From Macrostomum lignano (Eukaryota), in assembly GCA_002269645.1 (NCBI GenBank), contig NIVC01001834.1:1-64000 (forward strand): DNA of 64,000 bases. The letters are read 5' to 3'. Position 1 is the first letter of the stretch. Each line of letters opens with the position of its first letter. A program made the translations under genes and the position numbers. Shown here piece after piece: positions 831 through 51,544 of the stretch. Below the pieces are notes generated by a model, which saw only the letters and a list, made by a program, of their open reading frames with translations, had not been told where the DNA came from and did not search any database.

Positions 831-958
831 TACAAAAAAAAAACGAGATTTAAGTTTTGTACATAATAATCTGTGTGACTCGGCGCGGATGATGTGGACG
901 GGACACACCGGCGCAGGGATACAGTGACGCGTTGGTGACTCACTCGTCGCCGACGTTT

Positions 959-1235
959 ACGTTGTCGATCTGGCCAGCGTGCGACGGCCGTCAACGTCTT
1001 GTTCGAGCTAGTCTGTCAGCGCCTCAGGGTGTACAGAGGCCCTAACTGTTTATCGGTCAGGCATGTACACTCTCTGCGCCTTGGAGTTGGCCCTAATGGT
1101 TGTGAATCGCACGACAACCTCCGGTAAGTGTGGTGAATGCGCCACCTAGTTTAGGTCTCCGCCTAGCCACCCCTGCTTAATTGTACTGCAATGTCGATCC
1201 CACCCCAAACCCTAGGCTAGGTTGAGTCGCGATTG
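959..1235 (-). mobile_element. SINE-like element sharing a central body with SINE family A (cassette copy 1)
   Basis: Shares GTGTACAG.GGCCCTAAC..TTTATCG.T.AGGCATGTACACT..CTG.GCC.TGG.GTTGGCCCT with the SINE at 50020-50290; repeated at 7441 and 16246. Confidence 0.5.
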
Positions 1236-1264
1236 ACCTTTCTCATTCGTTTATCTCACTCTAA

Positions 1265-2050
1265 AGGGAGATCGCTTGCGCCGTTACTGTCGCTTGCGCG
1301 GCTCAGCGTGCTTGGCTACGCCGACGATCTCGCCCTCCTTTCCTCCACCGTCGAGGGCGCCCAGCGCCAGCTGGACCGGCTGGTAAGCGTTGCGGCGAGC
1401 GTCGGCCTGGTGGTCAACACGCAGAAGACCGTTGTGCTCTGCGTACCGGACGACATCGAGGCTGCAATTTTCTGCCGAGGCGCAGACGCGCAGGTGACGA
1501 GGCTTCCGCGATGTCAGCAGTTCGTCTATCTCGGCGGTCTGGTGCCTGACGTTCGTGAGGACCTGCGACTTTGCTATGGATTTGCCTGTGCTGCCTTCCG
1601 TTCCGTGAGGGCTGTCCAGCAGTCCGAGGCCCTGCCTGACCGCCAGAGGGCGGCGTTGTTCCAGGCGGTGATCGAAACCGTACTGTTGTACAACGCCGAG
1701 ACCTGGACCCTGACTGATTCACTCGAACAGCAGGTCGATGCGGCGCACGCTGGCCTGCTGTGCGCCGCCTTCAAGATCGGCTACGAGCGAGTCACCAATG
1801 CGGCACTCTATCGCCACACCGGCCTGTCCCGTCCCAGCGAAATGTTGCGCCATCGGCGACTCCAGCTGGCAAGGCCATATCATCTGAGACGAGTCGTACT
1901 GCCCACAGCCGGTGCAGAAAGTGCTTTTGCTCACGCTGCAGGAACCCTACCGGCGGGGGCAGGCCCGCACTCGGCGTTTCGTCGACTGCCTGCTGGCTGA
2001 TGCCGGCGGTGCGGCCTACGTTCGCGCCCAGGCCCTGAAACGCGCCCTGT
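1265..2050 (+). mobile_element. 5'-truncated RTE/RTEX-like non-LTR retrotransposon fragment (RT C-terminal half)
   Basis: ORF 1233..2000 contains GYADDLALL...VNTQKT...FVYLGG...ETVLLYNAETWTL; frameshifted near the 3' end; same family as 61490-63470. Confidence 0.9.
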
Positions 2051-2300
2051 GACATTGTCCCACGTTTGCTGGCTGACGTATTTTTTGTTGTTGTTGTCGC
2101 TCTAGTTGATTGGCTCAGCCGTTTTTTTGGGGCTACGTACGAGTGTAAGTCCCAGTTGTTGTCGTCCGTTTTTGGAAGGTTTGACTGGTTGGACGCGTCG
2201 TACGCCCGTCGCACCTCAACTGGCACGCGTGCCAGAAGCATTAGGTTAATTTTTAGTTAATTTGGTAGCATTCTGTCAGTGATATCTGCTTCAGTAATTA

Positions 2301-2826
2301 TGTGAAGGCCTGGGGTGGATTGGCTGGGCCGGGCAGCAGCTGGCTCAACTTTTCCTCACCCCCCGCCGCGGTGTGATTGGCTGGCGTGGGGTAGGGCCTG
2401 TCGGGAGGGGTTGTGGGGGTTGGTGGGCTCGAGGGTTTGCAGCTCTCCCCCCCCGCGTGCGCTAGCCATTTAGGTAGTCTGGGCGTCGTCACTCGCCTCT
2501 CTATACCTAGTTTGGCTTTTGGTGCTGTCCTGTGATTGGTTTGCTCTCGCCGTAAGGACGTTTTCCTATGGAAAAGATCCAATCCAAAGAGACGTGTTGA
2601 AAAAATCTAAGAAAGTTGGATGCGTTCCTCTGTCTTCCTTCTTTTGGTTACAAAAGGGGGCAACTAAGGCTCCGTGTGTCCTGACGCCTACTTACTGTAG
2701 TTTAGGCTACCTGGCGTCCTGATGCAGGCATGATCCACATAGGAACATCCTGACAACCGACAAGCAAGGTGCACCCGTACCCTGTACACCCTACCGTATT
2801 ATATAGGCCCGAGGTATAGGGATACA
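2301..2826. mobile_element. Solo-LTR-like non-coding repeat (TGT...ACA termini)
   Basis: Begins TGTGAAGG and ends GGGATA(A)CA, has a TATATA box, and is conserved in all three cassettes. No clear TSD. Confidence 0.35.
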
Positions 2827-3439
2827 TCATTATTTTTTACTGTTTCAGTGTATATCTTTTTTATCGTTTGCAGTACGAGCCAGTTTGTGTGGTAGTCGTT
2901 TCAATAGTATTGTAACAATTTTTTAATAATAGTAATACTCTACAATTTAGTGTTTATAATAAATTTGTTATACTGTATGATTTGTTTTAATGCGATTGAT
3001 TTTTGTTAACTATGATAGACTTTATTGGACTATAGGCGCGATCCAATAGGTAGCCAACTTAAATTAGTATTAATAAAAAGGCGCCCAAGGAGAAAATTCT
3101 TTCATTGGTTTCAACCTTTTCGGTTCAGTCGTATTAATCAGTTCTGAATCTGTAGTCTAATCCTAATCATTCTTCTAAAAGGAGTGTTTGTCGATAGAAC
3201 AGTAATTGCAAAGAAAAACTCGTTCTGTTGCAGAGAAAAAGGCGTTTTGTCTGTGAAACAATTGGTGTTTAACTGCTTTACACGTGTTGCAGAGCATGAA
3301 GTAAAGGGGCAACTTGCCCTGTGCCAAGTGAAAAGCTATGGGGGGAGTCCCCTGGAAATGAAGAAAGCCGGGAACCTCTCGATCATTGATAACGCCGTTT
3401 TGGGACTTGACGCCTACAACAGCTTGGTGTCAGCTTGTG

Positions 3440-3730
3440 TGCTGCTGCATCGCAGGGGAGCAGCACACAAGCGCGCGAATACGTACGCAGTCATGCGCAC
3501 AGGCACACTCACACAGGAGTGTACAGCGGCCCTAACTTTATTTATCGTTAGGCATGTACACTTCACTGTGCCTTTGGGGTTGGCGCTTAAGCTGGGAATT
3601 ACGAGCGTATTTGCACGAGCAGAGCCAAGCCGAGATTCCTATTTAGCCTCAAAATTAATGCGACTGCACTTGGAATCGAGCCTGGGCCGCAGGCACATCA
3701 GAGCGCCGCGCCAGACCACTAGTCTACACC
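3440..3730 (-). mobile_element. Degenerate copy of tRNA-derived SINE family A
   Basis: Colinear with 50020-50290 (GAGCAGAGCCAAGCCGAGATTCC.ATTTAGCCTCAAAATTAATG; GGAATCGAGCCTGGGCCG). Confidence 0.75.
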
Positions 3731-3920
3731 CCCCATGTTCTCTACATGTAAATCTGCAGCCTCAATCTCATTGGACGAGCTTTGCTAGATCGATTATAAC
3801 AAACTCTGGGATTGGTGAGTGCATAAAAAGCGATGATCTGCTCCCAAATATTAGAAATTCGTTATTGAGTTTTGTGCTACGATTTCAAAAGCAAGATTAG
3901 CAAAATTTTAAAGTCTCGAA

Positions 3921-4691
3921 ATGAAGATCCTCAACAAATTCCCGGCAATCCTGCTCGAGCTGCAGTGCCTACTGATCTCGGTGACGGCTGGCAGCAGCCA
4001 GTGCTCATCGCAGCAGTCATTCACAGCCGTGAACGCCAGCCTGTGCATCGGCAGCGAGTTCACGGAGACGCCCCTGGGCAGCAGCGCGGCAGCATCGGAG
4101 GTCCTGTGCTCGCTGCTCTGCGCCAGCAGGCCCCGCTGCCAGGCCTTCAGCTTGGCCCGCGGCCCCTGCCAGCTGTTCGTGTTCGACAGGTGCAGCAAAG
4201 GCGTGCGGGACTGCAGCGCCAGCTGCTCGGCCTTCGGTCGGTCTTCGTGAAGCAGCGGCCGGGCCTGCCGCCTGGAAAACTCTGCCCGCCTGAGTTCGAT
4301 TCCCAGCGGTGCGGGTTCGCTACCGGCTGGTGAACGGCACGGCCGGCTGGCAGAGGGGCCGGCAGGTCTGCGCCAACCAGACCGGCCTCGTCATCATGGC
4401 CGACGTGCTGGACGCTGAGGAGCTGCGCTTCATCAGCTCCCAGTTCAGCGGCCTGAACATCTGGCTCGGCGGCCACCAGGAAGAGGGAAGTCCCGAGCCC
4501 GAGGGTGGCGTTGGCTGGACTGTGGGCTGGAGTTCGATCCCAGCCTGTGGGTTGCAGGTGAACCAAATGACGGTGGAAATGCCGAGAAGTACATTCTCCG
4601 CTACTCGGGCACAGCTGGTCTGGTAGACGCACCAGAAACGCTGTCTTTCCCAACGAATGCCCTGTGCGAGTGCTTCTCGCCGTTTGAATGA
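3921..4691 (+). pseudogene. PAN/apple + C-type lectin gene, copy 1, frameshifted
   Basis: Colinear with intact 19295..20071 but has several small deletions (e.g. near 4240, 4315, 4500) that split the ORF. Confidence 0.8.
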
Positions 4692-5259
4692 CGTGTGCCT
4701 GTCATTAGTGATACTCGAGTTCAACTGCTATAAAAATCGCTACGTGGGAATAGTGAAGTCCTCGTGTGATGCCCCGATATCGCGGAGTTAATGGGTTTTC
4801 CTGAACAAAACTGAAAAAAATGTTTTTAGATGATTCGTGTCCCAGGAAACACCCACAAGTGCTTCACGTGGCGCATCGATGCGCAAAAAATTGAACGAAC
4901 GAGTGGCAGTCAATTGGATAATATAAAAGCCCTTTTTGCCCACTTTATATCTGTCAATTTAATGCTTCGTTGCTCATGGCTACTAAAAGTATGGCTAGTA
5001 AGATAATTGGGATACTTTTGCTATGAAACAGCAGAAAATCTCTTAGCAAATATCAATCAAATTGTTTATCATTAGGGAGTTGGATTTCTTCGGTCCTCGT
5101 TTTAAATATTTTAGTAATGGAATTAGAAGTACGAGCTATCTCACAGCACTCTACGAGTAGGTTAGAAAAATATGTTATTTTCTGCGTTAAGTTGGCACAA
5201 AACCGTACCAGTAGTACACTAACACGGTTGTATATAGATTTATGATTCGTTTTTCAAAT

Positions 5260-6349
5260 TCAAAAAACAACAGATCTCCTTCGACCCATCCTGTTCAATT
5301 CCTTGACGGCGGCATCCTGCTGGCTCTGATTGTCTTCTTCAACGGGCTGCTCTGTTAAATCGCCGTTGCTCAGTCGTCTCTGAAATTGCGGATAAACAGG
5401 GGCAGTGAATTCGGCACATCGATGGGTTTTAATGCTGAGAAACATTACAATTTAAAGCCTTATTTACCCCTTGATTGAGCAGTGTTTTTAGTAGAGGAGA
5501 CTTTTCAAAGGTGGATAAACGTTCGGTTAGCTTCAGGACTTTTTCTTTCAGTTGTCCGACTTCAATGGCCCTCTGTTTATCTCTGGTCTTGAGCTTCATC
5601 AACAAATTATTGATTTCTTTTAGTTCGGAGTCCTTTCGCTGCAGCTCCTGTTGGAAGCGCTGCACCGTGAGCTCCAGGTGGCCATCGGTACCCGAGCAGT
5701 AGTGCTCATCGAGCTGCGACATTGCCACGTTCGTCTGACACCCGATGCTCTGTCGGTACTTGCAGTCGCTCGGTCTCTCCGGACAGGTCATCAGGTGCTC
5801 CTCGAACTCCGAGCGGTACAGCCTGCTGCTCGAGTCGCTGCAGTGAGGACACGGAGCTCGGAACTCGGAGCAGCAGTGAGGAGACCGCAGATCCGTGTGG
5901 CAGCCGTTCAGCTCGAACTGACGGACTCGCTCCGAGCAGCGGTCGCACGTGACGATCTCGAACTGGCACTCGTTGGTCAGATGAGAGTCCAGCTGCCTCA
6001 AGGTGAGCTGCTTCTCACAGCCGGACTCTTCGTTCGGGCATCGGACTTCAAGTTCGAGCACGTCCTTACGTGTTGCAGTGTCGGGGAAGCAGACAGCCTG
6101 ACTCACAAAGTGCTCAACAAGTCTCGCACGGTCTCTGCAGCTGTCCAGCGAATGAATGCAGGGACAGACTCGATCGCTGGATTGCAGCAGCTCGGTGCTG
6201 AAGCACCGCTGGCACAGGCGGCATCCGTGCGGAGTCTGGTAGGAATTTATGAGCAGCTCTGAGCAGCCGCTGCACATTAAATGGTTCGGTATCGGCTTGT
6301 TTCGAATTTTGATAGAAGATAAATCGCTTCGCACTAAAGCTTGCTCCAT
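5260..6349 (-). CDS. TRAF-like protein copy 1 (atypical RING, TRAF Zn fingers, coiled coil, no MATH); exons 6349..5468 and 5379..5260, 333 aa
   Basis: ORF 5429..6349 has CSGC-x11-HGCRLCQRC, FPDTATRKDVLELEVRCPNEESGC and HLMTCPERPSDCKY. A phase-0 intron 5467..5380 (GGG|GTAAAT, CAATTTCAG|AGA) joins it in frame to ORF 5260..5445. Confidence 0.85.
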
Positions 6350-7184
6350 TTTAGCTTGCTATAGGTGTCATTCAACTTGCGACGTAAAATTTGCGGCTTC
6401 TACACAGCAAGCTCGCGAATTTCTCATCCAAAACAGTCACTGGTTATAACATAACAAAAGTAGGTACTACCGTGTTTGGAGTGTTTACAACTGGCTGCAA
6501 CAACCCCAGGTAAATGAATTCGGTTGTGTGCGTGCAAGTACATTTAAGCTATAGATAACCTAAAGAGGTTAGGGCTACTGTAGTCTGCAGTGAAGGGTTG
6601 TAGCTCGTACACTCGTTTCTCTTCTATTTCTCTTCTCAATTCTATTTATGGCAAGTACCCTGCAATGTTGTCAATTCAACAGAACTGTCCCACAGCGCGA
6701 CCTGCACACTGAAATTTATGCACGTGATGCGTCTTATCTTATTTTTAGTTGAACAACAAGTTTATGTAGTCGTTTGCACAGTTTTTAGTAAACAAGTATT
6801 GGTTAATTATGGTTTAATTTGAGTATCATTAACCCTATGTTGACTGTTGGATCCGAGGTCTCACCATCTGGACATTTGAAATGCAGCATGCATGCGTTTG
6901 GTCCGATGTGAACTCGCAAGTTAATTGAGCTACTAGAACCACAGGATACACTTGAACTAATCTTGCAAAGTTCCGGCGAATATTTCAGCTACTGAAATCA
7001 TTTTTTATATATGGCAAAACCTCATTGTATCTTACGCTCTTACGCACAGCGTTTTTCTTACAAGTTACAGGAGCGTCGCCATGGATTTTATGGTAGGGGA
7101 GACGAAGCCGAGAGTTCTACATCTACATATACATTACTAAATTCCTACATGTACATTATTTCCGAACCGGTGTTGTCAGCGATC

Positions 7185-7345
7185 ATTTTAGCGCCGCAGG
7201 CACTCATTTTGGCGCCGCAGGCACTCATTTTAGCGCCGCAGGCACTCATTTTAGCGCCGCATGCACTCAATTTAGCGCAGCAGGAACACATTTTAGTGCC
7301 ACAGGCACTCATTTTAGCGCCGCATGCACTCAATTTAATGGTGCA
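7185..7345. repeat. 21-bp minisatellite (GCACTCATTTTAGCGCCGCAG), short allele
   Basis: About 7 tandem units; the same unit is expanded at 15785-16150. Confidence 0.9.
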
Positions 7346-7440
7346 GATGCTATGTTTTGTCGCCCTGAAGTGAAATGATTGATTTCCATAACAGGTCAAC
7401 AAGGTGGGGTAGGGGGGGACAAAGCAGTGGCATGTCTCCT

Positions 7441-7720
7441 ACGTTGTCGATCTGGCCAGCGTTCGACGGCCGTCAGCGTGTTGTTCGAGCTAGTCTATCA
7501 GCGTCTCAGGGTGTACAGAGGCCCTAACTGTTTATCGGTCAGGCATATACACTCTCGAGCATTGGAGTTGGCTCTAATGGTTGTGAATCGCACGACAACC
7601 TCCGGTAATTGTGGGGTGAATGCGCCGCCTAGTTTAGTTCTCCGCCTAGCCACCCCTGCTTAATTGTACCGCAATGTCGATCCCCCCCCCCAAACCCTAG
7701 GCTAGGTTGAGTCGCGATTG
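7441..7720 (-). mobile_element. SINE-like element (cassette copy 2)
   Basis: Near-identical to 959-1235. Confidence 0.5.
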
Positions 7721-7749
7721 ACTCTTTTCTCATTCGTTTATCTCACTCT

Positions 7750-8520
7750 AAAGGGAGATCGCTTGCGCCGTTACTGTCGCTTGCGCGGCTCAGCGTGCTT
7801 GGCTACGCCGACGATCTCGCCCTCCTTTCCTCGACCGTCGAGGGCGCCCAGCGCCAGCTGGACCGGCTGGTAAGCGTTGCGGCGTCGGCCTGGTGGTCAA
7901 CACGCAGAAGACCGTTGTGCTCTGCGTGCCGGACGACATTGAGGCTGCAATTTTCTGCCGAGGCGCAGACGCGCAGGTGACGAGGCTTCCGCGATGTCAG
8001 CAGTTCGTCTATCTCGGCGGTCTGGTACCTGACGTTCGTGAGGACCTGCGACTTTGCTGTGGACTTGCCTGGGCTGCCTTCCTTTTCGAGGAAGTCCAAG
8101 GCCCTACCTGACCGCCAGAGGGCGGCGTTGTTCCAGGCGGTGATCGAAACCGTACTGTTGTACAACGCCGAGACCTGGGCCCTGTCTGATTCACTCGAAC
8201 AGCAGGTCGATGCGGCGCACGCTGGACTGCTGCGCGCCGCTTCAAGATCGGCTACGAGCGAGTCACCATTGCGGCACTCTATCGCCGCACCAGCCTGTCC
8301 CGTCCCAGCGAAATGTTGCGCCATCGACTCCAGCTGGCAAAGCCATTCTATCCGAGCCGAGTCGTACTGCCCACAGCCGGTGCAGGAAGTGCTTTTGCTC
8401 ACGCTGCAGGAACCTTACCGGCGGGGGCAGGCCCGCACTTGGCGTTTCGTCGACTGCCTGTTGGCTGATGCCGGCGGTGCGGCCTACGTTCGCGCCCAGG
8501 CCCTGAAACGCGCCCTGTGA
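7750..8520 (+). mobile_element. RTE/RTEX-like fragment (cassette copy 2)
   Basis: GYADDLALL at 7798; colinear with 1265-2050, with additional frameshifts. Confidence 0.9.
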
Positions 8521-8873
8521 CATTGTCCCACGCTTGACTATCTGACGTATTTTTTGTTTTTGTTGTCGCTCTAGTTGATTGGCTCAGCCGTTTTTTGTGG
8601 CTACGTACGAGTGTAAGTCCCAGTTGTTGTCGTCCGTTTTTGGAAGGTTTTACTGGTTGGACGCGTCGTACGCCCGTCGCACCTCAACTGGCACGCGTGC
8701 CAGAGGCATTAGAGAATCACTCGAGCTGTCTGGTCCTAGCCGACTCTGCGTCGTACGTCAGTAGGTTGGGTGACCGCGGTGCTGCTTTGGACCATAAGTT
8801 TGGTACTTGCATGTTAATTTGGTAGCATGTTAATTTGGTAGCATTCTGTCAGTGATATCTGCTTAAGTTGTTA

Positions 8874-9401
8874 TGTGAAGGCCTGGTGTGGATTGGCTGG
8901 GCCGGGCAGCTGGCTCAGTTTTTCCTCACCCCCCGCCGCGGTGTGATTGGCTGGCGTGGGGCAGGGCCTGTCGGGAGGGTTGTGGGGGTTGGTGGGCTCG
9001 GGGGTTTGCAGCCTCTCCCCCCCCCCGCGTGCGCTAGCCATTTAAGGTAGTCTGGGCGTCGTCACTCGCCTCTCTATACCTAGTTTGGCTTTCGGTGCTG
9101 TCCTGTGATTGGTTTGCTCTCGCCGTAAGGACATTTTCCTATGGAAAAGATCCAATTCAAAGAGACGTATTGAAAGGAGCTAGGAAAGTTGGATGCGTTC
9201 CTCTGTCTTCCTTCTTTTGGTTGCCAAAAGGGGGCAACTAAGGCTTCGTGTGTCCTGACGCCTACTTACTGTAGTTTAGGCTACCTGGCGTCCTGATGCA
9301 GGTATGATCCACATAGGAACATCCTGACAACCGACAAGCAAGGTGCACCCGTACCCTGTACACCCTACCGTATTATATAGGCCCGAGGTGTAGGGATAAC
9401 A
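8874..9401. mobile_element. Solo-LTR-like repeat (cassette copy 2)
   Basis: Near-identical to 2301-2826. Confidence 0.35.
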
Positions 9402-10009
9402 TCATTATTTTTTACTGTTTCAGTGTATATCTTTTTTATCGTTTGCAGTACGAGCCAGTTTGTGTGGTAGTCATTTCAATAGTATTGTAACAATTTTTTA
9501 ATAATAGTAATATTCTACAATTTAGTGTTTAAAATAAATTTGTTATACTGTATGATTTGTTTTAATGCGATTGATTTTTGTTAACTATGCTAGACTTTAT
9601 TGGACCATAGGCGCGATCCAATAGGTAGCCAACTTAAATTAGTATTTATACAGAGGAGCGCAAGGAGAAAATTCTTTCACGGGTTTTAACCTTTTCTTAA
9701 TCAGTTCTGAATCTGTAGTCTTATCTTAATCATTCTTCTAAAAGGAGTGTTTGTCGATAGAACAGTAATTGCAAAGAAAAACTCGTTTTGTTGCAGAGAA
9801 AAAGGCGTTCTGTCTGTGAAACAATTGGTGTTTAACTGCTTTACACGTGTTGCAGAGTGAAGTAAAGGGGCAACTTGCCCTGTGCCAAGTGAAAAGCTAT
9901 GGGGGGGAGTCCCCTGGAAATGAAGAAAGCCGGGAACCTCTCGATCATTGATAACGCCGTTTTGGGACTTGACGCCTACAACAGCTTGGTGTCAGCTTGT
10001 GTGCAGCAC

Positions 10010-10285
10010 ACAAGGGCGCGAATACGTACGCAGTCATACGCACAGGCACTCACTCACACAGGAGTGCACAGCGGCCCTAACTTAATTTATCGTTAGGCAT
10101 GTACACTTCACTGTGCCTTTGGGGGTTGGCCCTTAAGCTGGGAATTACGAGCGTAATTGCACGAGCAGAGCCAAGCCAAGATTCCTATTTAGCCTCAAAA
10201 TTAATGTGTCTGTACTTGGAATCGAGCCTGGACCGCTGGCACATCAGAGCGCCTCGCCAGACCACTAATCTACACCCCCATGTTC
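10010..10285 (-). mobile_element. Degenerate SINE family A (cassette copy 2)
   Basis: Colinear with 3440-3730 and 50020-50290. Confidence 0.7.
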
Positions 10286-10465
10286 TCTACATGTAAATCT
10301 GCAGCCTCAATCTCATTGGACGAGCTTTGCTAGATCGATTATAACAAACTCTGGGATTGGTGAGTGCATAAAAAGCGATGATCTGCTCCTAAATATTAGA
10401 AATTCGTTATTGAGTTTTGTGCTACGATTTCAAATGCAAGATTAGCAAAATTTTAAAGTCTCGAA

Positions 10466-13728: not shown

Positions 13729-15746
13729 TGTGATGGGTTTCGACCTTTCGGCCCCCTTATGGGGAAGCCTTCGGGCCCCAGGTCTCAGAAATAAATCAAT
13801 TAGAGTCCTGGCCCCCCACTCCTGTCAGATGGTCAGCCCCATGGTAGCTTGATCGTGTGGTGAGCAGCCTAGGTCCTATAGCTAAGAGAGGGACAGCGAG
13901 AGACAGGCAGGGAGAATTTTGAAGGTAGAAATTAGTTAATCCGCAGATTAGCTAACTCGCTGCCACCAGCCCGTACGTCCTGGCTCACCACACCGGGACT
14001 CTCGAAATCGGGCTTCCGACTAGAAGGAAGGGGCTTTGCACTTACCTGCCAACTAGTGTCTTTTTGCTGTCAATCTCGAAGTCATAGCCGATGATAAGGG
14101 ACACTGCTGGGACTAGATCGCATTGGCCATGCAGGTACAGAGGGGACTTGTGCAGGGGATTCTTGCAGTGGCGAGTCTATGGGGTAGCTACATGTAGCTC
14201 GTACTATAACATTGCTAAATACGAAGATATGTACTTTTGGCCTTCAACGCGCCAACCAGCTTCTAGTAGCGCTGATGATAGGCTAACTCGAACTTCAGAG
14301 ACCGCATGATTCATTACCCGAGCCGCTTGGCTACCCTAGAGTGCACAGAGTACATCTCTGGCGCCGATTTTGCACTATTGGCAATTTCGCTAACTGATTT
14401 GATAGATTAATCAACTGAGAACTGCCTTGCCATTGGTCCATTGTGACCGGCGCCTACTAGCTTAGCTACTCATCTGAGCCATCGGCGAACAAAGAAATAA
14501 AACCGATAAAAATAACTGTCAGATTTAACCTTCTCCTTAGATCACTTCACACTTCAGATTGAATTGGAGTTTCAGACTACTAACAGTATTATTGAATGAT
14601 TTCTGCCTCGATATCAGCACTACTGAACAAAACGAGCAAAAGTGTGCGCCTAATCCAGCTACTGAAACAGGGGACAGATAGGGAATCACCCAATCAAGCA
14701 AGTCTAGGCAGCCTCTCACCCAACCAATCAGAAACTCAACAGCCGGAGACCAGGTAATCCACAGTGACCGAAACGGCTTAGTGCTTCGCAGCTGTAGACC
14801 TGGGATGGTGCTGATGTCACAACCTTCGCAGGTAGGTAGCAGGTGATGCTCTTCACTTTGATGTTCACTACTGATGACCGGGGGAATTCGTCCTTGATGA
14901 TGATGATGCGGGAAGTCGCAATCCGGGGATCAAGAAACGAAGGTCAGGCCAGGGAAAGAGCGAGTTCCTAGCCGATAGCAAGCACCCTTTTTTGGGGTCC
15001 GAGCGGGCCAAAAACACCGGTTCAAATAGCCGCCAACTGGACCACAGTTTGTTATAATGGAACACGTCGATTCTGATTGGCTGAGCCGTTTTGTTAAAAT
15101 GAGCGCCGAATTTCCTGATTAGTTGAGCTAGTTGCCACCCAAAATCACGTGACCGGGAGATCCTATCAGTTCCCACAGGGTCGTAAAAAAATGACAGGTG
15201 CAGTGGCCATAAATCAATCAAAATCGCAACAAAATGATTTATGACATTTCGCGTAGGATTGACAGAAATTAATGAAAAAATATACATCAGAAAGCTCTTA
15301 TTAAATAGAAAGTGAAGATAATGAAGAGAAACGGCTAATCGCTAATCCCAAAGTACTTTTGGGGGTAAAACGCATAGCTGTCAAAGCTGTCACACGCTTG
15401 AGTGAACCCGAACAATAGGCTCTGACCTCATAAATCTTGATGGCCTGTCAAAATGATGAGAAAAAAGCTACCGCCCGCATCCTCTCAGACCATCTGGCGC
15501 CCGCCTCAACACTGAGTGAGGCGCAGGTGGCTTTCAGACCAACTTCGAAAGCAATGATTTATGACCCAAAAAAGCTATACCTATGTTATTATGACTACTA
15601 GTATGACCAAACATAATATCTAGTATAGATTCTATGACAATTCGCAGAAAAAGGATAAAAATGCCCATTGCCCACTGTTAGTAGGCTAGTAAGGTTAGAG
15701 CCCATGTGTTAGCGCGGGGTTTGGAAAAAAGTGCGTCCTCATCACA
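13729..15746. mobile_element. ~2.0-kb non-coding insertion with short terminal inverted repeats (solo LTR or non-autonomous DNA transposon)
   Basis: Termini TGTGATGGG...CCTCATCACA. The empty site TTCCTACATGTACATTATTT is present at about 7142-7161 in cassette 1. Confidence 0.7.
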
Positions 15747-15784
15747 CGTACATTATTTCCGAATCGGTGTTGTCAGCGATCGTT

Positions 15785-16150
15785 TTGGCGCCGCAATCAC
15801 TCACTTTGGCGCCGCAGGCACTCATTTTAGCGCCGCAAGCACTCATTTAAGCGCCGCAAGCACTCATTTTAGCGCCGCAGGATCTTATTTTAGAGCCGCA
15901 GGTACTCATTTTAGCGCCGCAGGCACTCATTTTAGCGCCGCAGGTACTCATTTTAGCGCCGCAGGCACTCATTTTAGCGCCGCAGGCACTCATTTTAGCG
16001 CCGCAGGCACTCATTTTAGCGCCACAGGCACTCATTTTAGCGCCACAGGCACTCATTTTAGCGCCGCAGGCACTCATTTTAGCGTCACAGGCACTCATTT
16101 TAGCGCCGCATGCACTCAATTTAGCGCCACAGGCACTCATTTTAGTGGTG
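15785..16150. repeat. 21-bp minisatellite, long allele
   Basis: About 17 tandem GCACTCATTTTAGCGCCGCAG units. Confidence 0.9.
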
Positions 16151-16245
16151 CAGATGCTATGTTTTGTCGCCCTGAAGTGAAATGATTGATTTCCATAACA
16201 GGTCAACAAGGTGGGGTGGGGGGACAAAGCATTGGCATGTCTCCT

Positions 16246-16520
16246 ACGTTGTCGATCTGGCCAGCGTGCGACGGCCGTCAACGTGTTGTTCGAGCTAGTC
16301 TATCAGCGTCTCAGGGTGTACAGAGGCCCTAACTGTTTATTGGTCAGGCATGTGCACTCTGTGCCTTGGAGTTGGCCCTCATGGTTGTGAATTGCACGAC
16401 AACCTCTGGTAAGTGTGGTGAATGCGCCACCTAGTTTAGTTCTCCGCCGAGCCACCCCTGCTTAATTGTACTGCAATGTCAGTCCCACCCCAAACCCTAG
16501 GCAAGGTTGAGTCGCGATTG
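16246..16520 (-). mobile_element. SINE-like element (cassette copy 3)
   Basis: Near-identical to 959-1235. Confidence 0.5.
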
Positions 16521-16549
16521 ACTCTTTTCTCATTCGTTTATCTCACTCT

Positions 16550-17325
16550 AAAGGGAGATCGCTTGCGCCGTTACTGTCGCTTGCGCGGCTCAGCGTGCTT
16601 GGCTACGCCGACGATCTCGCCCTCCTTTCCTCGACTGTCCAGGGCGCCCAGCGCCAGCTGGACCGGCTAATAAGCGTTGCAGCGAGCGTCGGCCTGGTGA
16701 TCAACACGCAGAAGACCGTTGTGCTCTGCGTGCCGGACGACATCGAGGCTGCATTTTTCTACCGAGGCGCAGACGCGCAGGTGACGAGGCTTCTGCGATG
16801 TCAGCAGTTCGTCTATCTTGGCGGTCTGGTGCCTGACGTTCGTGAGGACCTGCGACGTCACCGTGGATTTGCCTGGGCTGCCTTCCGTTCCGTGAAGGCT
16901 GTCCTGCAGTCCAAGGCCCTGCCTGACCGCCAGATAGCGGCGTTGTTCCAGGTGGTAGAAACAGTCTTGTTGTACAACGCCGAGACCTGGGCCCTGTCTG
17001 ATTCGCTCGAACAGCAGGTCGATGCGGCGCACGCTGGCCTGCTGTGCGCCGCCTTCAAGATCGGCTACGAGCGAGTCACCAATGCGGCACTCTATCACCA
17101 CACCGGCCTGTCCTGTCCCAGCGAAATGTTGCGCCGGCGACTCCAGCTGGCAAGGCCATATCATCTGAGACGAGTCGTACTGCCCACAGCCGGTGCAGAA
17201 AGTGCTTTTGCTCACTCTGCAGGAGCCCTACCGGCGGGGGCAGGCCCGCACTTGGCGTTTCGTCGACTGCCTGCTGGCTGATGCCGGCGGTGTTCGCGCC
17301 CAGGCCCTGAAACGCGCCCTGTGAC
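16550..17325 (+). mobile_element. RTE/RTEX-like fragment (cassette copy 3)
   Basis: ORF 16595..17281 begins LGYADDLALL. Confidence 0.9.
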
Positions 17326-17676
17326 ATTGTCCCACGTTTGCTGGCTGACCTATTTGTTTTGTTGTTGTCGCTCTAGTTGATTGGCTCAGCCGTTTTTTGT
17401 GGCTACGTACGAGTGTAAGTCCCAGTTGTTGTCGTCCGTTTTTGGAAGGTTTTACTGGTTGGACGCGTCGTACGCCCGTCGCACCTCAACTGGCACGCGT
17501 GCCAGAGGCATTAGAGAATCACTCGAGCTGTCTGGTCCTAGCCGACTCTGCGTCGTACGTCAGTAGGTTGGGGTGACCGCGGTGCTGCTTTGGACCATAA
17601 GTTTGGTACTTGCATGTTAATTTGGTTGCATGTTAATTTGGTAGCATTCTGTCAGTGATATCTGCTTCAGTAATTA

Positions 17677-18201
17677 TGTGAAGGCCTGGGGTGGATTGGC
17701 TGGGCCGGGCAGCAGCTGGCTCAACTTTTCCTCACCCCCCGCCGCGGTGTGATTGGCTGGCGTGGGGTAGGGCCTGTCGGGAGGGTTGTGGGGGTTGGTG
17801 GGCTCGAGGGTTTGCAGCCTCCCCCCCGCGTGCGCTAGCCATTTAAGGTAGTCTGGGCGTCGTCACTCGACTCTCTATACCTAGTTTGGCTTTTGGTGCT
17901 GTCCTGTGATTGGTTTGCTCTCGCCGTAAGGACATTTTCCTATGGAAAAGATCCAATTCAAAGAGACGTATTGAAAGGAGCTAGGAAAGTTGGATGCGTT
18001 CCTCTGTCTTCCTTCTTTTGGTTGCCAAAAGGGGGCAACTAAGGCTTCGTGTGTCCTGACGCCTACTTACTGTAGTTTAGGCTACCTGGCGTCCTGATGC
18101 AGGTATGATCCACATAGGAACATCCTGACACCGACAAGCAAGGTGCACCCGTACCCTGTACACCCTACCGTATTATATAGGCCCGAGGTGTAGGGATAAC
18201 A
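17677..18201. mobile_element. Solo-LTR-like repeat (cassette copy 3)
   Basis: Near-identical to 2301-2826. Confidence 0.35.
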
Positions 18202-18799
18202 TCATTATTTTTTACTGTTTCAGTGTATATCTTTTTTATCGTTTGCAGTACGAGCCAGTTTGTGTGGTAGTCGTTTCAATAGTATTGTAACAATTTTTTA
18301 ATAATAGTAATATTCTACAATTTAGTGTTTATAATAAATTTGTTATACTGTATGATTTGTTTTAATGCGATTGATTTTTGTAAACTATGATAGACTTTAT
18401 TGGACCATAGGCGCGATCCAATAGGTAGCCAACTTAAATTAGTATTAATAAAAAGGCGCCCAAGGAGAAAATTCTTTTACGGGTTTTAACCTTTTCTTAA
18501 TCAGTTCTGAATCTGTAGTCTTATCTTAATCATTCTTCTAAAAGGAGTGTTTGTCGATAGAACAGTAATTGCAAAGAAAAACTCGTTTTGTTGCAGAGAA
18601 AAAGGCGTTCTGTCTGTGAAACAATTGGTGTTTAACTGCTTTACACGTGTCGCAGAGTGAAGTAAAGGGGCAACTTGCCCTGTGCCAAGTGAAAAGCTAT
18701 GGGGGGGAGTCCCCTGGAAATGAAGAAAGCCGGGAACCTCTCGATCATTGATAACGCCGTTTTGGGACTTGACGCCTACAACAGCTTGGTGTCAGCTTG

Positions 18800-19105
18800 T
18801 GTGCTGCTCCCCTGAGCATCGCAGGGGAGCAGCACACAAGCGCGCGAATACGTACGCAGTCATGCGCACAGGCACTCACTCACACAGGAGTGTACAGCGG
18901 CCCTAACTTTATTTATCGTTAGGCATGTACACTACTCTGTGCCTTTGGGGTTGGCCCTTAAGCTGGGAATTAATTGCACGAGCAGAGCCAAGCCAAGATT
19001 CCTATTTAGCCTCAAAATTAATGTGTCTGTTAGTCTGTACTTGGAATCGAGCCTGGACCGCTGGCACATCAGAGCGCCGCGCCAGACCACTAGTCTACAC
19101 CCCCC
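18800..19105 (-). mobile_element. Degenerate SINE family A (cassette copy 3)
   Basis: Colinear with 3440-3730. Confidence 0.7.
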
Positions 19106-19294
19106 ATGTTCTCTACATGTAAATCTGCAGCCTCAATCTCATTGGACGAGCTTTTCTAGATCAATTATAACAAACTCTGGGATAGGTGAGTGCATAAAAA
19201 GCGATGATGATCTGCTCCCAAATATTAGAAATTCGTTATTGAGTTTTGTGCTACGATTTCAAAAGCAAGATTAGCAAAATTTGAAAGTCTCGAA

Positions 19295-20071
19295 ATGAAG
19301 ATCCTCAAAAACTTCCCGGCAATCCTGCTCGAGCTGCAGTGCTTTCTAACCTCGGTGACGGCTGGCAGCAGCCAGTGCTCATCGCAGCAGGCATTCACAG
19401 CCGTGAACGCCAGCCTGTGCATCGGCAGCGAGTTCACGGAGACGCCCCTGGGCAGCAGCGCGGCAGCATCGGAGGTCCTGTGCTCGCTGCTCTGCGCCAG
19501 CAGGCCCCGCTGCCAGGCCTTCAGCTTGGCCCGCGGCTCCTGCCAGCTGTTCGTGTTCGACAGGTGCAGCAAAGGCGTGCGGGACTGCAGCGCCAGCTGC
19601 TCGGCCTCCGGTCGGGTCTTCGTGAAGCAGCGGCCGGGCCTGCCGCCTGGAAAACTTTGCCCGCCTGAGTTCGATTCCCAGCGGTGCGGGGTTCGCTACC
19701 GGCTGGTGAACGGCACGGCCGGCTGGCAGAGGGGCCGGCATGTCTGCGCCAACCAGACCGGCCTCGTCATCATGGCCGACGTGCTGAACGCTGAGGAGCT
19801 GCGCTTCATCAGCTCCCAGTTCAGCGGCCTGAACATCTGGCTCGGCGGCCACCAGGAAGAGGGAAGTCCCGAGCCAGGCGGAGGGTGGCGGTGGCTGGAC
19901 TGTGGTCTGGAGTTCGATCCCAGCCTGTGGGCTGCAGCTGAACCAAATGACGGTGGAAATGCCGAGAAGTACATTCTCCACTACTCGGGCACAGCCGGCC
20001 TGGTAGACGCACCAGAAACGCTGTCTTTCCCAACGAATGCCCTGTGCGAGTGCGTCTCGCCGTTTGAATGA
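19295..20071 (+). CDS. Secreted PAN/apple + C-type lectin domain protein, 258 aa, single exon, intact
   Basis: Hydrophobic signal peptide; PAN-like SEVLCSLLCASRPRCQAFSL..CQL; CTLD with W...R.VC, IWLGG, WRW, WAAAEPND and LCEC. Confidence 0.85.
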   Translation: MKILKNFPAILLELQCFLTSVTAGSSQCSSQQAFTAVNASLCIGSEFTETPLGSSAAASEVLCSLLCASRPRCQAFSLARGSCQLFVFDRCSKGVRDCSASCSASGRVFVKQRPGLPPGKLCPPEFDSQRCGVRYRLVNGTAGWQRGRHVCANQTGLVIMADVLNAEELRFISSQFSGLNIWLGGHQEEGSPEPGGGWRWLDCGLEFDPSLWAAAEPNDGGNAEKYILHYSGTAGLVDAPETLSFPTNALCECVSPFE

Positions 20072-20701
20072 CGTGTGCTTGTCATTAGTGATACTCGAGT
20101 TAAACTGCTATAAAAATCGCTACGTGGGAATAGTGAAGTCCTCGTGTGATTCCCCGATATCGTGGAGGTAATGGGTTTTCCTGAACAAAACTGAAAAAAA
20201 TGTTTTTAGATGATTCGTGTCCCAGGAAACACTCACAAGTGCTTCACGTGGCGCATCGATGCGCAAAAAATTGAACGAACGAGTGGCAGTCAGTTGGATA
20301 ATAAAAACCCCTTTTTGCCCACTTTATATCTGTCAATTTAATGGCTTCGTTGCTCATGGCTACTAAAAGTAAGGCTAGAAAGATAAGTGATACTTATGCC
20401 ATAAAACAATAGCAATGATCTGTTAGCAAGTATGAATTTGTTAGCGAGCTGTTTAACAGGGAGATTGACTTTTTTGGTCCTCCTTTTAAATAGCATTGGA
20501 ATTTGAAGTACACGCATCTCGCAGCACGACGTTTTATGTAGAAAAAACATTTTTTTTGCTTTTAGTTGGCACAAAACCGTACCAGTAGTACACTAACAAG
20601 AATGTATCCTGTACAATACATGTAACACGTTGTATCTGGATGTATGCAATTTTAGTATATAGATTTACATGTACGGTTCGATTTTCAACTTCAAATAGCC
20701 T

Positions 20702-21770
20702 TCAAATACGCCATTCAATAGACATCTTTCGCCTCATTCTGTTCGATGAAGTAATCGATTCTTTGACCACGGTATCCTGCTGGCTCTGATTGTCTTCTTC
20801 AGCGGGCTGCTCTGTCAAATCGCTGTTGCTCAGTCGTCTCTGAAATTGCGAATAATCAGGGGCAGTGAATTCGGCACATCGATGGGTTTTAATGCTGAGA
20901 AACATTACAATTTAAAGCATTATTTACCCCTTGGTTGAGCAGTTTTTTTAGTAGAGGAGACTTTTCAAAGGTGGATAAACGTTCGGTTAGCTTCAAGACT
21001 TTTTCCTGCAGTTGTCCGACCGAATTATTCATTTCTTTTAGTTCGGAGTCCTTTTGCTGCAGCTCCTGTTGGAAGCGCTGCACCGTGAGCTCGAGGTGCC
21101 CGTCGGTACCCGAGCAGTAGTGCTCATCCAGCTGCGACATTGCCATGTTCGTCTGACACCCGATGCTCTGTCGGTACTTGCAGTCGCTCGGTCTCTCCGG
21201 ACACGTCATCAGGTGCTCCTGGAACTCCGAGCGGTCCAGCCTGCTGCTCGAGTCGCTGCAGTGAGGACACGGAGCTCGGAACTCGGAGCAGCAGTGAGGA
21301 GACCGCAGATCCGTGTGGCAGCCGTTCATCTCGAACTGACGGACTCGCTCCGAGCAGCGGTCGCACGTGACGATCTCGAACTGGCACTCGTCGGTCAGAT
21401 GAGAGTCCAGCTGCCTCAAGGTGAGCTGCTTCTCACAGCCGGACTCTTTGTTCGGGCATCGGACTTCAAGTTCGAGCACGTCCTTTCGTGTTGCAGTGTC
21501 GGGGAAGCAGTCGGCCTGACTCACGAAGTGCTCAACAAGTCTCGCACGGTCTCTGCAGCTGTCTAGCGAATGAATGCATGGACAGACTCGATCGCTGGAT
21601 TGCAGCAGCTCGGTGCTGAAGCACCGCTGGCACAGGCGGCATCCGTGCGGAGTCTGGTAGCAGTTTATGAGCAGCTCTGAGCAGCCGCTGCACATTAAAT
21701 GGTTCGGGATCGGCTCGTTTCGAATTTTGATGGAAGAGAAATCGCTTCGCACTTTAAAAGCGGACTTCAT
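20702..21770 (-). CDS. TRAF-like protein copy 3; exons 21770..20928 and 20839..20702
   Basis: ORFs 20889..21770 and 20702..20905 with conserved splice sites; 14-aa deletion in the coiled coil; different N- and C-termini. Confidence 0.85.
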
Positions 21771-22365
21771 TGCCTTGCTGGTTTCCTTCTAATTGCAACT
21801 TACAATTTGCGGCTTCCGCAATTATTGTCTATATGAATTTATCAGCACACAGCAGCTCGCACATTCGCCAACCTAAGCCATCACTAGTGACTATATAGCA
21901 AAAGTAGGTACTACCGTATTCGGAGTGTTTACAAGTGTCTACAACAACCCCAGTGAATTGAAGTTGTTTATGCGCAAGTACCATAAAGCTATAGACTAAA
22001 GAGGTTAGGGCTACTGTAGCCCTGCAGTGAATGATTGTACACTCGTTTCTAAAAGCTTACTCGATCTCTCTTACCTTGCAAATGCTATTTACGGCAATTA
22101 CACTGCAATGTTATCAATTCAACAGAATTGTCATACACCGACAATTAATTTACGCACGTGACGCGTCTTGTCTTACGGCTTATAGCCCTCTGCACAACAA
22201 ATGGGATAGAAATCAATGGTTAATTGGCTTAATTTGAATATTAATGACTCTTAAAATGTTGACTGTTGTATCCGATGTCACCTTCTGGACATTCGAAATG
22301 CAGCATGGATGCAATCTGTCCGATATGTGCACTCGCAAGTTCATTAAGCAATTTGAACTAATCAT

Positions 22366-22674
22366 AATAATAATAATAACTGATTACACCTGCCTCAATT
22401 GGGCCAGATGTGCAACCGACAGCTCAGCCGCAGCTATTGCGCGGCGCATCTGAAGGCTGCGTACGGCTGTTCAGTCCAAGGACTGGGGGGGTCGCCACAC
22501 ACAGCCTCAATTACCCCAGCTAATGCTGACACCCATTTTACAGTTGGGTGAACTGAAGCAATGCAGAGTTAAGTGTCTTGCTCAAGGACACAAATTGTTC
22601 CGGGTGGGTCAGGAATCGAACCTCCGGACCTTCAAGTCGTGAGTCCGACGCCCCAACCATAAGCTACACCCCCC
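22366..22674 (-). mobile_element. tRNA-derived SINE family B, full length, with 10-bp TSD AACTAATCAT
   Basis: A/B-box head (TAGCTTATGG, GGTTCGATTCC on the minus strand), body GTCCTTGAGCAAGACACTT, (TTA)n tail; TSD at 22356-22365 and 22675-22684. Absent from cassettes 1 and 2. Confidence 0.9.
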
Positions 22675-23344
22675 AACTAATCATGCAAAGTTCTAGCGAG
22701 ATTTTCAGCTATTCCAATCATTGTATCCATGCCGGAACCTTATTTTAGCGCTATACAAAAGCAAACCTATGCCGAAGTCACTCTTCAAAAAAACTTTTTT
22801 TTCTAACTTTTTCTTGGCAAACCTTGCGAGTGCAGTTCCCGAATGAAACGAATACTTGGTTGGTTTACAATTCGGATGTCCAAAAGGTGCCACATGGTGA
22901 GCTTCATTGTAAAGCTGACAAAAAAAACTGAAAGTCTGCTGTTTTAATCACAATTATTTGTCCATGCTGAAAGTGTGATTAAGCAAATTAAGTAAATTTA
23001 TATCTGGAAAAAAAGAGCGTATAGGCTACTAGATAAAAGTAGTACCGTAGATGGGTCTAATGCGATATCTGTAAATAATCTTTAGTAATATTTACACTGA
23101 CCTATGGGCCAGATAAGATGAAAACTAAACACATCGTCCTAATTTGGCCATCTCGGTTTGGGGCGATTGTGAAATGCAGTTAGAATACCAAGTCTGTACT
23201 GGCGGAATAGGACCGAACTAATATAAAATATCATAATAATTCAGCTCCGCATCTCGATTGATTTTTTAATGCTAATTTTTTAAAACTATGAACTTATTTT
23301 TGCTGTTTTTATTTTAATCAGGGTAATTATAGCAAACATCAATA

Positions 23345-36402: not shown

Positions 36403-36498
36403 GGCTTTAAAAAATCGCTTAGCAAGGAACAATACGAGCTGCACATAGAAAGCAAAAAAACAATTAGTTAATGTTGGACACGTAAGCCAAAGTCTTAG

Positions 36499-51535: not shown

Positions 51536-51544
51536 GGGTTCCAG

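What the first reader, a model, noticed from the sequence alone, without database searches (positions are those of the whole stretch)
959..22700. Triplicated convergent lectin / TRAF-like cassette: a candidate innate-immunity module
Seen: a ~6.5-kb unit occurs three times (starts about 959, 7441, 16246). Each unit carries a secreted PAN+CTLD lectin (+) tail-to-tail with a RING/TRAF-finger gene (-), about 570-630 bp apart, and a fourth, more diverged TRAF-like gene ends at 830. Established: EPN-type C-type lectins act as pattern-recognition proteins, TRAF proteins as immune/stress signalling ubiquitin ligases, and TRAF-like genes are expanded in planarians. Inference: sensor and signalling genes may be amplified together as a copy-number-variable defence locus, though one could simply hitchhike with the other.
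Basis: partly seen in the sequence, partly recalled or inferred. Interest (0 to 1): 0.7.

Follow-up and report, generated by a model that had tools for sequence, protein, structure and literature searches.

The report
Tandem lectin/TRAF-like duplication in a flatworm
A stretch of the flatworm Macrostomum lignano genome carrying a lectin gene and a TRAF-like zinc-finger gene has been copied three times in a row, but two of the three lectin copies are broken, so this looks like an ordinary recent duplication and not a purpose-built immune module.

Summary
A unit starting at 958, 7440 and 16245 occurs three times head to tail at 93-96% identity. Each copy holds a PAN+C-type-lectin-like ORF (+) facing a RING-like/TRAF-zinc-finger gene (-), with stop codons 568-630 bp apart.

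The window is Macrostomum lignano, a macrostomorph and not a planarian.
- Only lectin copy C (19295-20071) has an open frame; A and B carry frameshifts.
- All three TRAF-like genes are intact, with two exons and an 88-nt intron, and have dN/dS 0.25-0.43. They lack the MATH/TRAF-C domain that defines TRAFs.
- Each unit begins with a dead LINE reverse-transcriptase fragment, and a 21-bp minisatellite sits at both junctions.
- The copies are mosaics of one another, which indicates gene conversion.
- Two contigs of the independent Mlig_3_7 assembly carry the same locus. One has exactly two units; at least two are visible in the other.
- Two older TRAF-like paralogs lie upstream without any lectin, and lectin relatives elsewhere sit in tandem without TRAF.

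Best reading: a recent copy-number-variable tandem duplication inside a TRAF-like gene cluster, with the lectin as a decaying passenger. Nothing supports a functional sensor-signalling coupling. Interest is low.

The parts
958..7152 (.). Repeat unit A: LINE fragment, lectin pseudogene, TRAF-like gene
   Evidence: Self-BLAST, 94-96% identical to unit B and 94% to unit C; sharp left edge at 958
7153..7439 (.). A/B junction: 21-bp minisatellite (7183-7337, 7.4 copies) plus about 100-bp tail that is also found before unit C
   Evidence: TRF; junction sequences
7440..13731 (.). Repeat unit B
13732..15744 (.). 2,013-bp insertion between units B and C. It is absent from both Mlig_3_7 contigs, has no terminal repeats and no recognisable ORF
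15745..16244 (.). B/C junction: 21-bp minisatellite (15783-16145, 17.3 copies) plus the same tail as at the A/B junction
16245..22176 (.). Repeat unit C. Its right-hand ~400 bp are only about 76% identical to A and B
1221..1997 (+). 5'-truncated non-LTR (LINE) reverse-transcriptase fragment with the YADD box, copy A. Copies B and C lie at about 7723-8465 and 16523-17278
   Evidence: Translation; Pfam RVT_1 E 1.1e-5, below the curated cut-off; tblastn to the other copies and to a LINE at 62738-63270
3921..4691 (+). PAN+CTLD lectin copy A, a pseudogene. Deletions of 1, 1 and 4 bp; first stop at codon 110
10466..11249 (+). PAN+CTLD lectin copy B, a pseudogene. A 7-bp net insertion; first stop at codon 169
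19295..20071 (+). PAN+CTLD lectin copy C. Intact single-exon ORF of 258 aa, with a putative signal peptide and an EPN motif
5260..6349 (-). TRAF-like gene A: exon 1 6349-5468, 88-nt intron, exon 2 5379-5260 including the stop; 333 aa. Corresponds to BOX15_Mlig001616g2 (100% identity in BLASTP; 1 residue differs, R118K)
11819..12908 (-). TRAF-like gene B, intact, 333 aa
20702..21770 (-). TRAF-like gene C, intact, 326 aa. It has a 14-aa in-frame deletion in the coiled coil relative to A and B
1..830 (+). Fourth, diverged TRAF-like gene (35% aa identity). It runs off the window start; exon 1 ends at 463, the intron is 464-557, exon 2 is 558-830
3500..3727 (.). Dispersed repeat about 200 bp upstream of each lectin ATG. 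Other copies lie at 10043-10266 and 18869-19098, and an 85-87% copy at 50068-50282

Best explanation
This is a recent tandem segmental duplication inside a cluster of TRAF-type zinc-finger RING-like genes of Macrostomum lignano.

A segment of about 6.2 kb was duplicated head to tail. It happened to contain a dead LINE fragment, a small secreted PAN+CTLD lectin gene and one TRAF-like gene. The array was then extended by unequal crossing-over, and the same junction (21-bp minisatellite plus tail) is present twice. The copies keep exchanging sequence by gene conversion, and copy number differs between versions of the locus.

The TRAF-like genes stay intact under purifying selection. The duplicated lectin copies decay, and only the copy next to the right flank stays open. 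The lectin is therefore most likely a passenger, and the convergent lectin/TRAF arrangement is an accident of which segment was copied.

Shown: the array, its junctions, the mosaicism, the frame status of each copy, the domain content, and the two-copy version in another assembly. Inferred: the mechanism (unequal crossing-over and conversion), the passenger status of the lectin, and any biochemical function.
For: - Three units at 93-96% identity with identical left edges, and the same junction sequence before B and C.
- The 21-bp minisatellite sits at both junctions.
- Of 422 phylogenetically informative sites, 255 group A+B, 91 group A+C and 76 group B+C. They are clustered in 110 runs against 235 +/- 8.5 in shuffles, 0 of 2000 shuffles as low. 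Sliding identity shows A=B at 100% over 5051-5711 and B=C at 100% over A 2591-2838 = B 9164-9413.
- Mlig_3_7 contig NIVC01002632.1 carries the same flanks with only two units, a C/B hybrid plus A, and is 8.8 kb shorter. Contig NIVC01000668.1 carries at least two.
- Lectin: frameshifts in A (-1, -1, -4) and B (+7). Only 2 of 7 copies across the three versions are open, both at the C position. The same 1-bp deletions are shared between assemblies, wA with L1a and wA with L2b, so they are real mutations. Lectin dN/dS is 0.49-0.85.
- TRAF-like: all three intact with conserved GT..AG introns; dN/dS 0.25-0.43; 6 of 7 open across versions.
- Two further TRAF-like paralogs lie upstream next to ANAPC2 with no lectin.
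- The M. lignano genome is more than half repetitive, with 180 Mb of duplicated blocks at 95% identity or more (PMC5730564), and is a neopolyploid with three subgenomes (PMC10733133).
Against: - The intact lectin copy is kept open in two independent versions of the locus, so the lectin is not simply junk. Its position facing a TRAF-like gene could still matter for regulation.
- No expression data could be consulted, so co-regulation is not excluded.
- Some 1-bp indels in the older PacBio-based contigs may be assembly errors. That could understate the number of open lectin copies there.
- It could not be decided whether the 2-versus-3 difference is allelic, homeologous or an assembly collapse.
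Confidence: 0.72

Rival explanations
1. One reading: a co-amplified sensor-plus-signaller defence cassette. The secreted lectin recognises microbes, the TRAF-like E3 ligase transduces the signal, and selection favours amplifying both together.
For: - Both domain types occur in immune pathways of other animals (established knowledge; planarian reviews PMC7958881 and PMC6109357).
- The pair is retained in convergent orientation in all units.
- Copy number varies between versions.
- One lectin copy is kept open in two versions.
Against: - Five of seven lectin copies are frameshifted, while six of seven TRAF-like copies are open.
- Older TRAF-like paralogs in the same cluster lack a lectin.
- Lectin relatives sit in tandem without TRAF.
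- There is no MATH/TRAF-C domain to dock on a receptor.
- The Asn of the WND calcium/sugar-site motif is missing.
- The lectin is not a called gene in the RNA-guided annotation.
- No known pathway links a secreted CTLD protein directly to a cytosolic RING protein.
Confidence: 0.08
2. Assembly artefact: alleles or homeologous copies of a single-copy (or two-copy) locus were strung together in tandem by the assembler in this repeat-rich neopolyploid genome.
For: - The M. lignano assemblies are known to be redundant and hard to assemble (PMC5730564, PMC10733133).
- An independent contig shows two units where this window shows three.
- Minisatellites lie at the junctions, where assemblers often err.
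Against: - Two independent Mlig_3_7 contigs each show at least two units in tandem with the same junction, so tandem duplication itself is real.
- The three copies here differ by 4-7%, with copy-specific indels and a copy-specific 2-kb insertion.
- The mosaic pattern is typical of paralogs that recombine.
Confidence: 0.12
3. The lectin is the selected gene, with a non-immune role. It could be a secreted reproductive, gut or adhesive protein of a fast-evolving Macrostomum-restricted family, and the TRAF-like genes would be the bystanders.
For: - Close full-length relatives (30-48% identity) are few, and most sit on ~1-kb contigs that look like transcripts from read archives.
- CTLD-containing proteins in Macrostomum are known from the adhesive system (PMC8621496, PMC6410801).
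- Lectin dN/dS is relatively high at 0.49-0.85.
Against: - Most lectin copies are broken while the TRAF-like copies are conserved.
- The high dN/dS is explained by pseudogenes being included in the comparison.
- No expression or localisation data are at hand.
Confidence: 0.08

Closest known systems
Tandem segmental duplications (tandemly arrayed genes) maintained by unequal crossing-over and gene conversion
   Same: Head-to-tail copies with identical junctions, a minisatellite at the junctions, mosaic similarity between copies, differing copy number between haplotypes or assemblies, and pseudogenisation of some duplicated genes.
   Different: Nothing essential. The only particular feature is that two unrelated genes and a dead LINE fragment travel together in the unit.
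TRAF6/TRAF2 N-terminal region (RING plus TRAF-type zinc fingers plus coiled coil)
   Same: Residues 18-190 align to the TRAF6 RING-zinc-finger crystal constructs (E 3.9e-9). Pfam zf-TRAF scores above its cut-off (38.2 bits against 27). A long helix at 222-282 follows, the only confident part of the model.
   Different: There is no MATH/TRAF-C domain, and only a 39-45-aa tail follows the coiled coil. The RING has 'PHGC' where TRAF6 has 'PCGH', so two zinc ligands are swapped. No Pfam RING family is matched. The fourth and fifth paralogs have 'PQGF' there and lack both ligands.
C-type lectin-like domains of the CD23 / codakine / CEL-I type (EPN or QPD carbohydrate-recognition domains)
   Same: The model (pLDDT 87, pTM 0.82) superposes on the CD23 lectin domain with TM 0.82 and E 2.5e-9. 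phmmer against the PDB gives CD23 at 7.3e-6, codakine at 1.1e-3 and CEL-I at 3.1e-3. An EPN motif is present.
   Different: The protein itself matches no Pfam Lectin_C model even at E = 1. 'WND' is replaced by 'LVD', so one calcium/sugar ligand is missing. The domain is preceded by a PAN/Apple-like domain.
Expanded MATH-domain TRAF family of the planarian Schmidtea mediterranea (PMC6109357, PMC7586133)
   Same: A flatworm lineage with many TRAF-related genes.
   Different: That expansion is defined by the MATH domain, which these genes lack. It is also in a different order of flatworms. No genomic pairing with lectins is described there.

Membership tests
TRAF family (TNF-receptor-associated factors) | C-terminal TRAF-C / MATH domain (definition as summarised in PMC7586133) | tested here: not met
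   Pfam scan at E <= 1 of copies B and C (exon 1) finds no MATH. The full 333-aa protein ends 39 residues after the coiled coil. Only 568-630 bp separate its stop from the lectin stop.
TRAF family (TNF-receptor-associated factors) | TRAF-type zinc fingers | tested here: met
   Pfam PF02176 at 34-40 bits against a cut-off of 27 in all three copies; alignment to TRAF6 zinc fingers.
TRAF family (TNF-receptor-associated factors) | N-terminal C3HC4 RING finger | tested here: inconclusive
   The region aligns to the TRAF6 RING. The third and fourth ligands are swapped (PHGC instead of PCGH) and no Pfam RING model is matched. The structure model is too poor to judge (pLDDT 51.5).
TRAF family (TNF-receptor-associated factors) | Coiled coil (TRAF-N) | tested here: met
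   Long helix at 222-282 with pLDDT about 80; weak coiled-coil family hits over 206-289.
C-type lectin-like domain (CTLD) superfamily | CTLD fold | tested here: met
   AlphaFold2 pLDDT 87.1, pTM 0.82. Foldseek to CD23 CTLD gives E 2.5e-9 and target TM 0.82, with 390 PDB hits at E <= 0.001 that are almost all CTLDs.
C-type lectin-like domain (CTLD) superfamily | Sequence match to the curated Pfam Lectin_C model | tested here: inconclusive
   The window protein has no hit at E <= 1. Eight of 17 aligned family members match Lectin_C, best 4.3e-10.
Calcium-dependent mannose-type (EPN) carbohydrate-recognition domains | EPN motif plus the WND motif, which supply the Ca2+-site-2 ligands | tested here: not met
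   EPN is present at 216-218, but WND is LVD in the window protein and LCD in its closest relative. More distant members keep ND. Sugar binding is therefore unproven.
PAN/Apple domain | Match to PAN models and the conserved cysteine pattern | tested here: inconclusive
   The protein's own Pfam hits (PAN_1, PAN_4) are at E 0.2, below threshold. phmmer to the Eimeria MIC5 apple domain gives 1.1e-3. Seven of 17 family members match PAN_1, best 2.1e-7. C63, C67, C73 and C83 are conserved across the family.
Tandem segmental duplication array | Head-to-tail copies sharing the same junction | tested here: met
Tandem segmental duplication array | Seen in an independent assembly | tested here: met
   Two Mlig_3_7 contigs carry two and at least two tandem units. 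Raw reads were not available.
   Lectin open in 1 of 3 copies here and 2 of 7 overall.
   In the limited data within reach, upstream TRAF-like paralogs have no lectin and a three-module lectin tandem has no TRAF. A genome-wide scan was not possible.
   No expression data. The only indirect hint is that the annotation calls the TRAF-like genes and not the lectin.

The most novel reading that the evidence does not exclude
The convergent lectin/TRAF-like pair could be a co-regulated unit, for example through overlapping 3' ends in the 570-630-bp tail-to-tail spacer. Its dosage would differ between the three subgenomes of the neopolyploid M. lignano. That would make it a copy-number-variable innate-immune locus in a free-living flatworm, built from a MATH-less TRAF-like ligase and a non-canonical EPN lectin.
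Probability: 0.06. Interest if true: 0.5.

Novelty: new member of a known kind. Interest (0 to 1): 0.2.

Why it matters
Mostly as annotation.
- It places an unannotated, intact PAN+CTLD gene (19295-20071) and two pseudogene copies in the M. lignano genome.
- It shows that the 'TRAF-type domain-containing' genes Mlig001616g2 and Mlig022970g1 belong to a cluster of at least five MATH-less TRAF-like genes.
- It documents a locus whose copy number differs between versions of this neopolyploid genome. Anyone doing knock-outs, RNAi or read-depth analysis of these genes needs to know this.
- It does not open a new biological question.

Tried and rejected
- Six-frame Pfam scans by DNA reference failed because of stop codons. 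I scanned stop-to-stop ORFs instead.
- Pfam on separate lectin exon-like pieces and on the full lectin found nothing significant. The fold was established by profile search, family-level Pfam hits, AlphaFold2 and Foldseek.
- The word-indexed protein search found only one lectin relative and, with a profile, four. None came from an annotated M. lignano genome, so a genome-wide test of lectin-TRAF linkage could not be done.
- Exact look-ups of the lectin and of relatives P0004 and P0005 found no contigs.
- AlphaFold2 of the TRAF-like protein with a five-sequence alignment gave pLDDT 51.5. That is too poor for a fold search or for judging the RING.
- Rfam found nothing in the window.
- The 2-kb insertion has no terminal repeats, no domain and no second copy in the data at hand. 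Its nature is unresolved.
- A literature search for the two gene identifiers found nothing.
- I considered that the frame breaks in lectin A and B are introns and rejected it. Copy C and copy L2a read straight through the same positions, and the differences are 1-, 4- and 7-bp indels.


Full report
**What is there.** The repeat finder and a self-BLAST of the window confirm a head-to-tail triplication.
- Unit A (958-7152) matches unit B (7440-13731) at 94-96% identity.
- Both match unit C (16245-~22176) at 93-94%.
- The left edge is the same base in all three copies, and the ~100 bp before units B and C are the same junction sequence.
- The right end fades. The last ~400 bp of C are only about 76% identical to A and B.
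- A 21-bp minisatellite lies at both junctions, with 7.4 copies at A/B and 17.3 at B/C.
- The B-to-C period (8,805 bp) is longer than the A-to-B period (6,482 bp). The reasons are the longer minisatellite and a 2,013-bp insertion at 13732-15744.
- That insertion is absent from both independent contigs of the locus. It has no terminal repeats or recognisable coding capacity.

**Organism.** The TRAF-like protein of unit A is 100% identical over 96% of its length to 'hypothetical protein BOX15_Mlig001616g2 [Macrostomum lignano]'. A second annotated protein, BOX15_Mlig022970g1, is 84% identical. The window therefore comes from M. lignano, a macrostomorph flatworm and not a planarian. Its genome is more than half repeats, has 180 Mb of duplicated blocks at 95% identity or more (PMC5730564), and is a neopolyploid with three subgenomes (PMC10733133).

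**Content of a unit.**
1. *LINE fragment.* At the left end is a 5'-truncated non-LTR reverse-transcriptase fragment with the YADD box (A: 1221-1997). The Pfam RVT_1 hit is weak. A 65%-identical relative lies in a LINE at 62738-63270.
2. *Dispersed repeat.* It lies about 200 bp upstream of the lectin start, and a fourth copy sits at 50068-50282.
3. *Lectin ORF on the + strand.* Details follow below.
4. *TRAF-like gene on the - strand.* It faces the lectin tail to tail, with stop codons 568 bp (A) to 630 bp (C) apart.

**The lectin.** Copy C (19295-20071) is an open 258-codon single-exon frame.
- It matches no Pfam family significantly by itself.
- phmmer against PDB sequences finds the CD23 lectin domain (7.3e-6), codakine, CEL-I and an Eimeria apple domain (1.1e-3).
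- A profile search finds 1,218 relatives.
- Of 17 aligned full-length family members, 8 match Pfam Lectin_C and 7 match PAN_1.
- An AlphaFold2 model is confident (pLDDT 87, pTM 0.82). Its C-terminal half superposes on the CD23 CTLD with TM 0.82 and E 2.5e-9.
- The PAN+CTLD call is therefore right.
- EPN is present, but the WND motif reads LVD, so one canonical calcium/sugar ligand is missing. Sugar binding is unproven.
- The N-terminus looks like a signal peptide. This is inferred and was not tested.

**Copies A and B are not intact.**
- Relative to C, copy A has 1-, 1- and 4-bp deletions, with the first stop at codon 110.
- Copy B has a 7-bp net insertion, with the first stop at codon 169.
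- These are not introns, because copy C reads straight through the same positions.

**The TRAF-like genes.** All three are intact, with two exons and a conserved 88-nt GT..AG intron. They encode 333, 333 and 326 aa.
- Each has a TRAF-type zinc finger above the Pfam cut-off.
- The N-terminal 190 residues align to the TRAF6 RING-zinc-finger constructs at E 3.9e-9.
- A long coiled-coil helix follows.
- There is no MATH/TRAF-C domain, which is the feature that defines TRAFs (PMC7586133).
- The RING is non-canonical, with PHGC in place of PCGH.
- They are best described as MATH-less TRAF-like RING/zinc-finger proteins. Ligase activity is an inference.

**Evolutionary signals.**
- dN/dS between TRAF-like copies is 0.25-0.43, with dS 0.06 (A/B) to 0.13.
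- dN/dS between lectin copies is 0.49-0.85.
- The three units are mosaics. Of 422 informative sites, 255 group A+B, 91 group A+C and 76 group B+C.
- These sites fall into 110 runs against 235 +/- 8.5 expected, and 0 of 2000 shuffles were as low.
- Some stretches have A=B at 100% and others B=C at 100%.
- This is the signature of gene conversion or unequal exchange between paralogs.

**Independent versions of the locus.** Two contigs of assembly Mlig_3_7 (GCA_002269645.1) carry it.
- NIVC01002632.1 (L001) has the same left and right flanks but only two units, a C/B hybrid followed by A. It is 8.8 kb shorter than the window.
- NIVC01000668.1 (L002) has at least two units.
- Across the seven lectin copies of the three versions, only two are open. 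Both are the copy next to the right flank.
- Two of the 1-bp deletions of copy A recur in the other assembly, so they are real mutations.
- Six of seven TRAF-like copies are open.
- The RNA-guided annotation of those contigs calls the TRAF-like genes and no lectin gene. The exact lectin protein is on record nowhere.

**Wider context.**
- Upstream of the array lie two older TRAF-like paralogs, about 35% identical and on the opposite strand.
The other is a 354-aa paralog with a C-terminal membrane anchor, next to ANAPC2.
- Neither has a lectin beside it.
- Conversely, one distant library entry (P0004) contains three PAN-CTLD modules about 390 residues apart with no TRAF similarity.
- In the data within reach, lectins and TRAF-like genes each duplicate on their own.
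- The rest of the window is rich in transposons and minisatellites.

**Interpretation.** The simplest account is a recent tandem duplication within a TRAF-like gene cluster.
- The array was enlarged and homogenised by unequal crossing-over and gene conversion, and it is variable in copy number.
- The lectin is a passenger that decays in the extra copies.
- The defence-module idea is not excluded, but every test that could be run went against it: frame status, recurrence of the linkage, the missing MATH domain and the missing annotation.
- An assembly artefact cannot be fully excluded for the third copy. Tandem duplication itself is seen on two independent contigs.
- This is an ordinary feature of a highly duplicated genome. 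Its value is in annotation and as a warning about copy number for functional work on these genes.

Noticed in passing
window 13732-15744: A 2,013-bp insertion between units B and C is absent from both Mlig_3_7 contigs. It has no terminal inverted or direct repeats, no domain hit and no second copy in the window. Its nature is unknown.
   Followed up: partly
window 22366-22651 (inverted copy 30109-30395; partial 51545-51734), with a tRNA-Val(CAC)-like structure at 22602-22674 (-): A dispersed ~290-bp repeat just right of unit C contains an ARAGORN tRNA-Val call. It may be a tRNA-derived SINE. Rfam gave no hit at gathering threshold.
   Followed up: partly
window 3500-3727, 10043-10266, 18869-19098 and 50068-50282: Another dispersed ~225-bp repeat lies about 200 bp upstream of each lectin start codon. 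By eye, its reverse strand shows tRNA-like A/B-box sequences.
   Followed up: no
window 23344-24846: A 15-bp minisatellite of about 100 copies creates long spurious ORFs, for example 23355-24632. Further large arrays lie at 25428-25733 (22 bp), 28432-29519 (79 bp), 35012-35399, 35896-36403, 38529-39450, 40219-42466, 46041-46741, 47669-48233, 48821-49641 and 55237-55854.
   Followed up: no
window 32829-34554 (+): Reverse-transcriptase and phage-integrase-like (tyrosine recombinase) ORFs lie side by side. This suggests a DIRS-like retroelement remnant. Both Pfam hits are below the curated cut-offs.
   Followed up: partly
window 37017-38408 (-): A single long ORF encodes a rhodopsin-family 7TM receptor (Pfam 7tm_1, E 1.5e-23).
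   Followed up: partly
window 44859-45632 (+): A mariner/Tc1-type transposase fragment (Pfam Transposase_1 and HTH_Tnp_Tc3_2).
   Followed up: partly
window 49490-51640 (-): Exon-like ORFs of a metallo-beta-lactamase-fold protein (Lactamase_B_2, E 1.5e-8).
   Followed up: partly
window 56200-59800 (+) and 61852-63270 (+): Two LINE-like elements with reverse-transcriptase ORFs. The second is the closest relative in the window (about 65% aa) of the RT fragment that heads each repeat unit.
   Followed up: partly
L001 18294-19358 (-): A fifth TRAF-like paralog (354 aa) next to ANAPC2 ends in a hydrophobic segment that looks like a C-terminal membrane anchor. Like the fourth paralog, it has 'PQGF' where the RING should have two zinc ligands.
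   Followed up: no
window 20928-21770 (-) and P0003: TRAF-like copy C and its counterpart Mlig022970g1 lack 14 residues (42 nt, in frame) of the coiled coil that copies A and B have.
   Followed up: no
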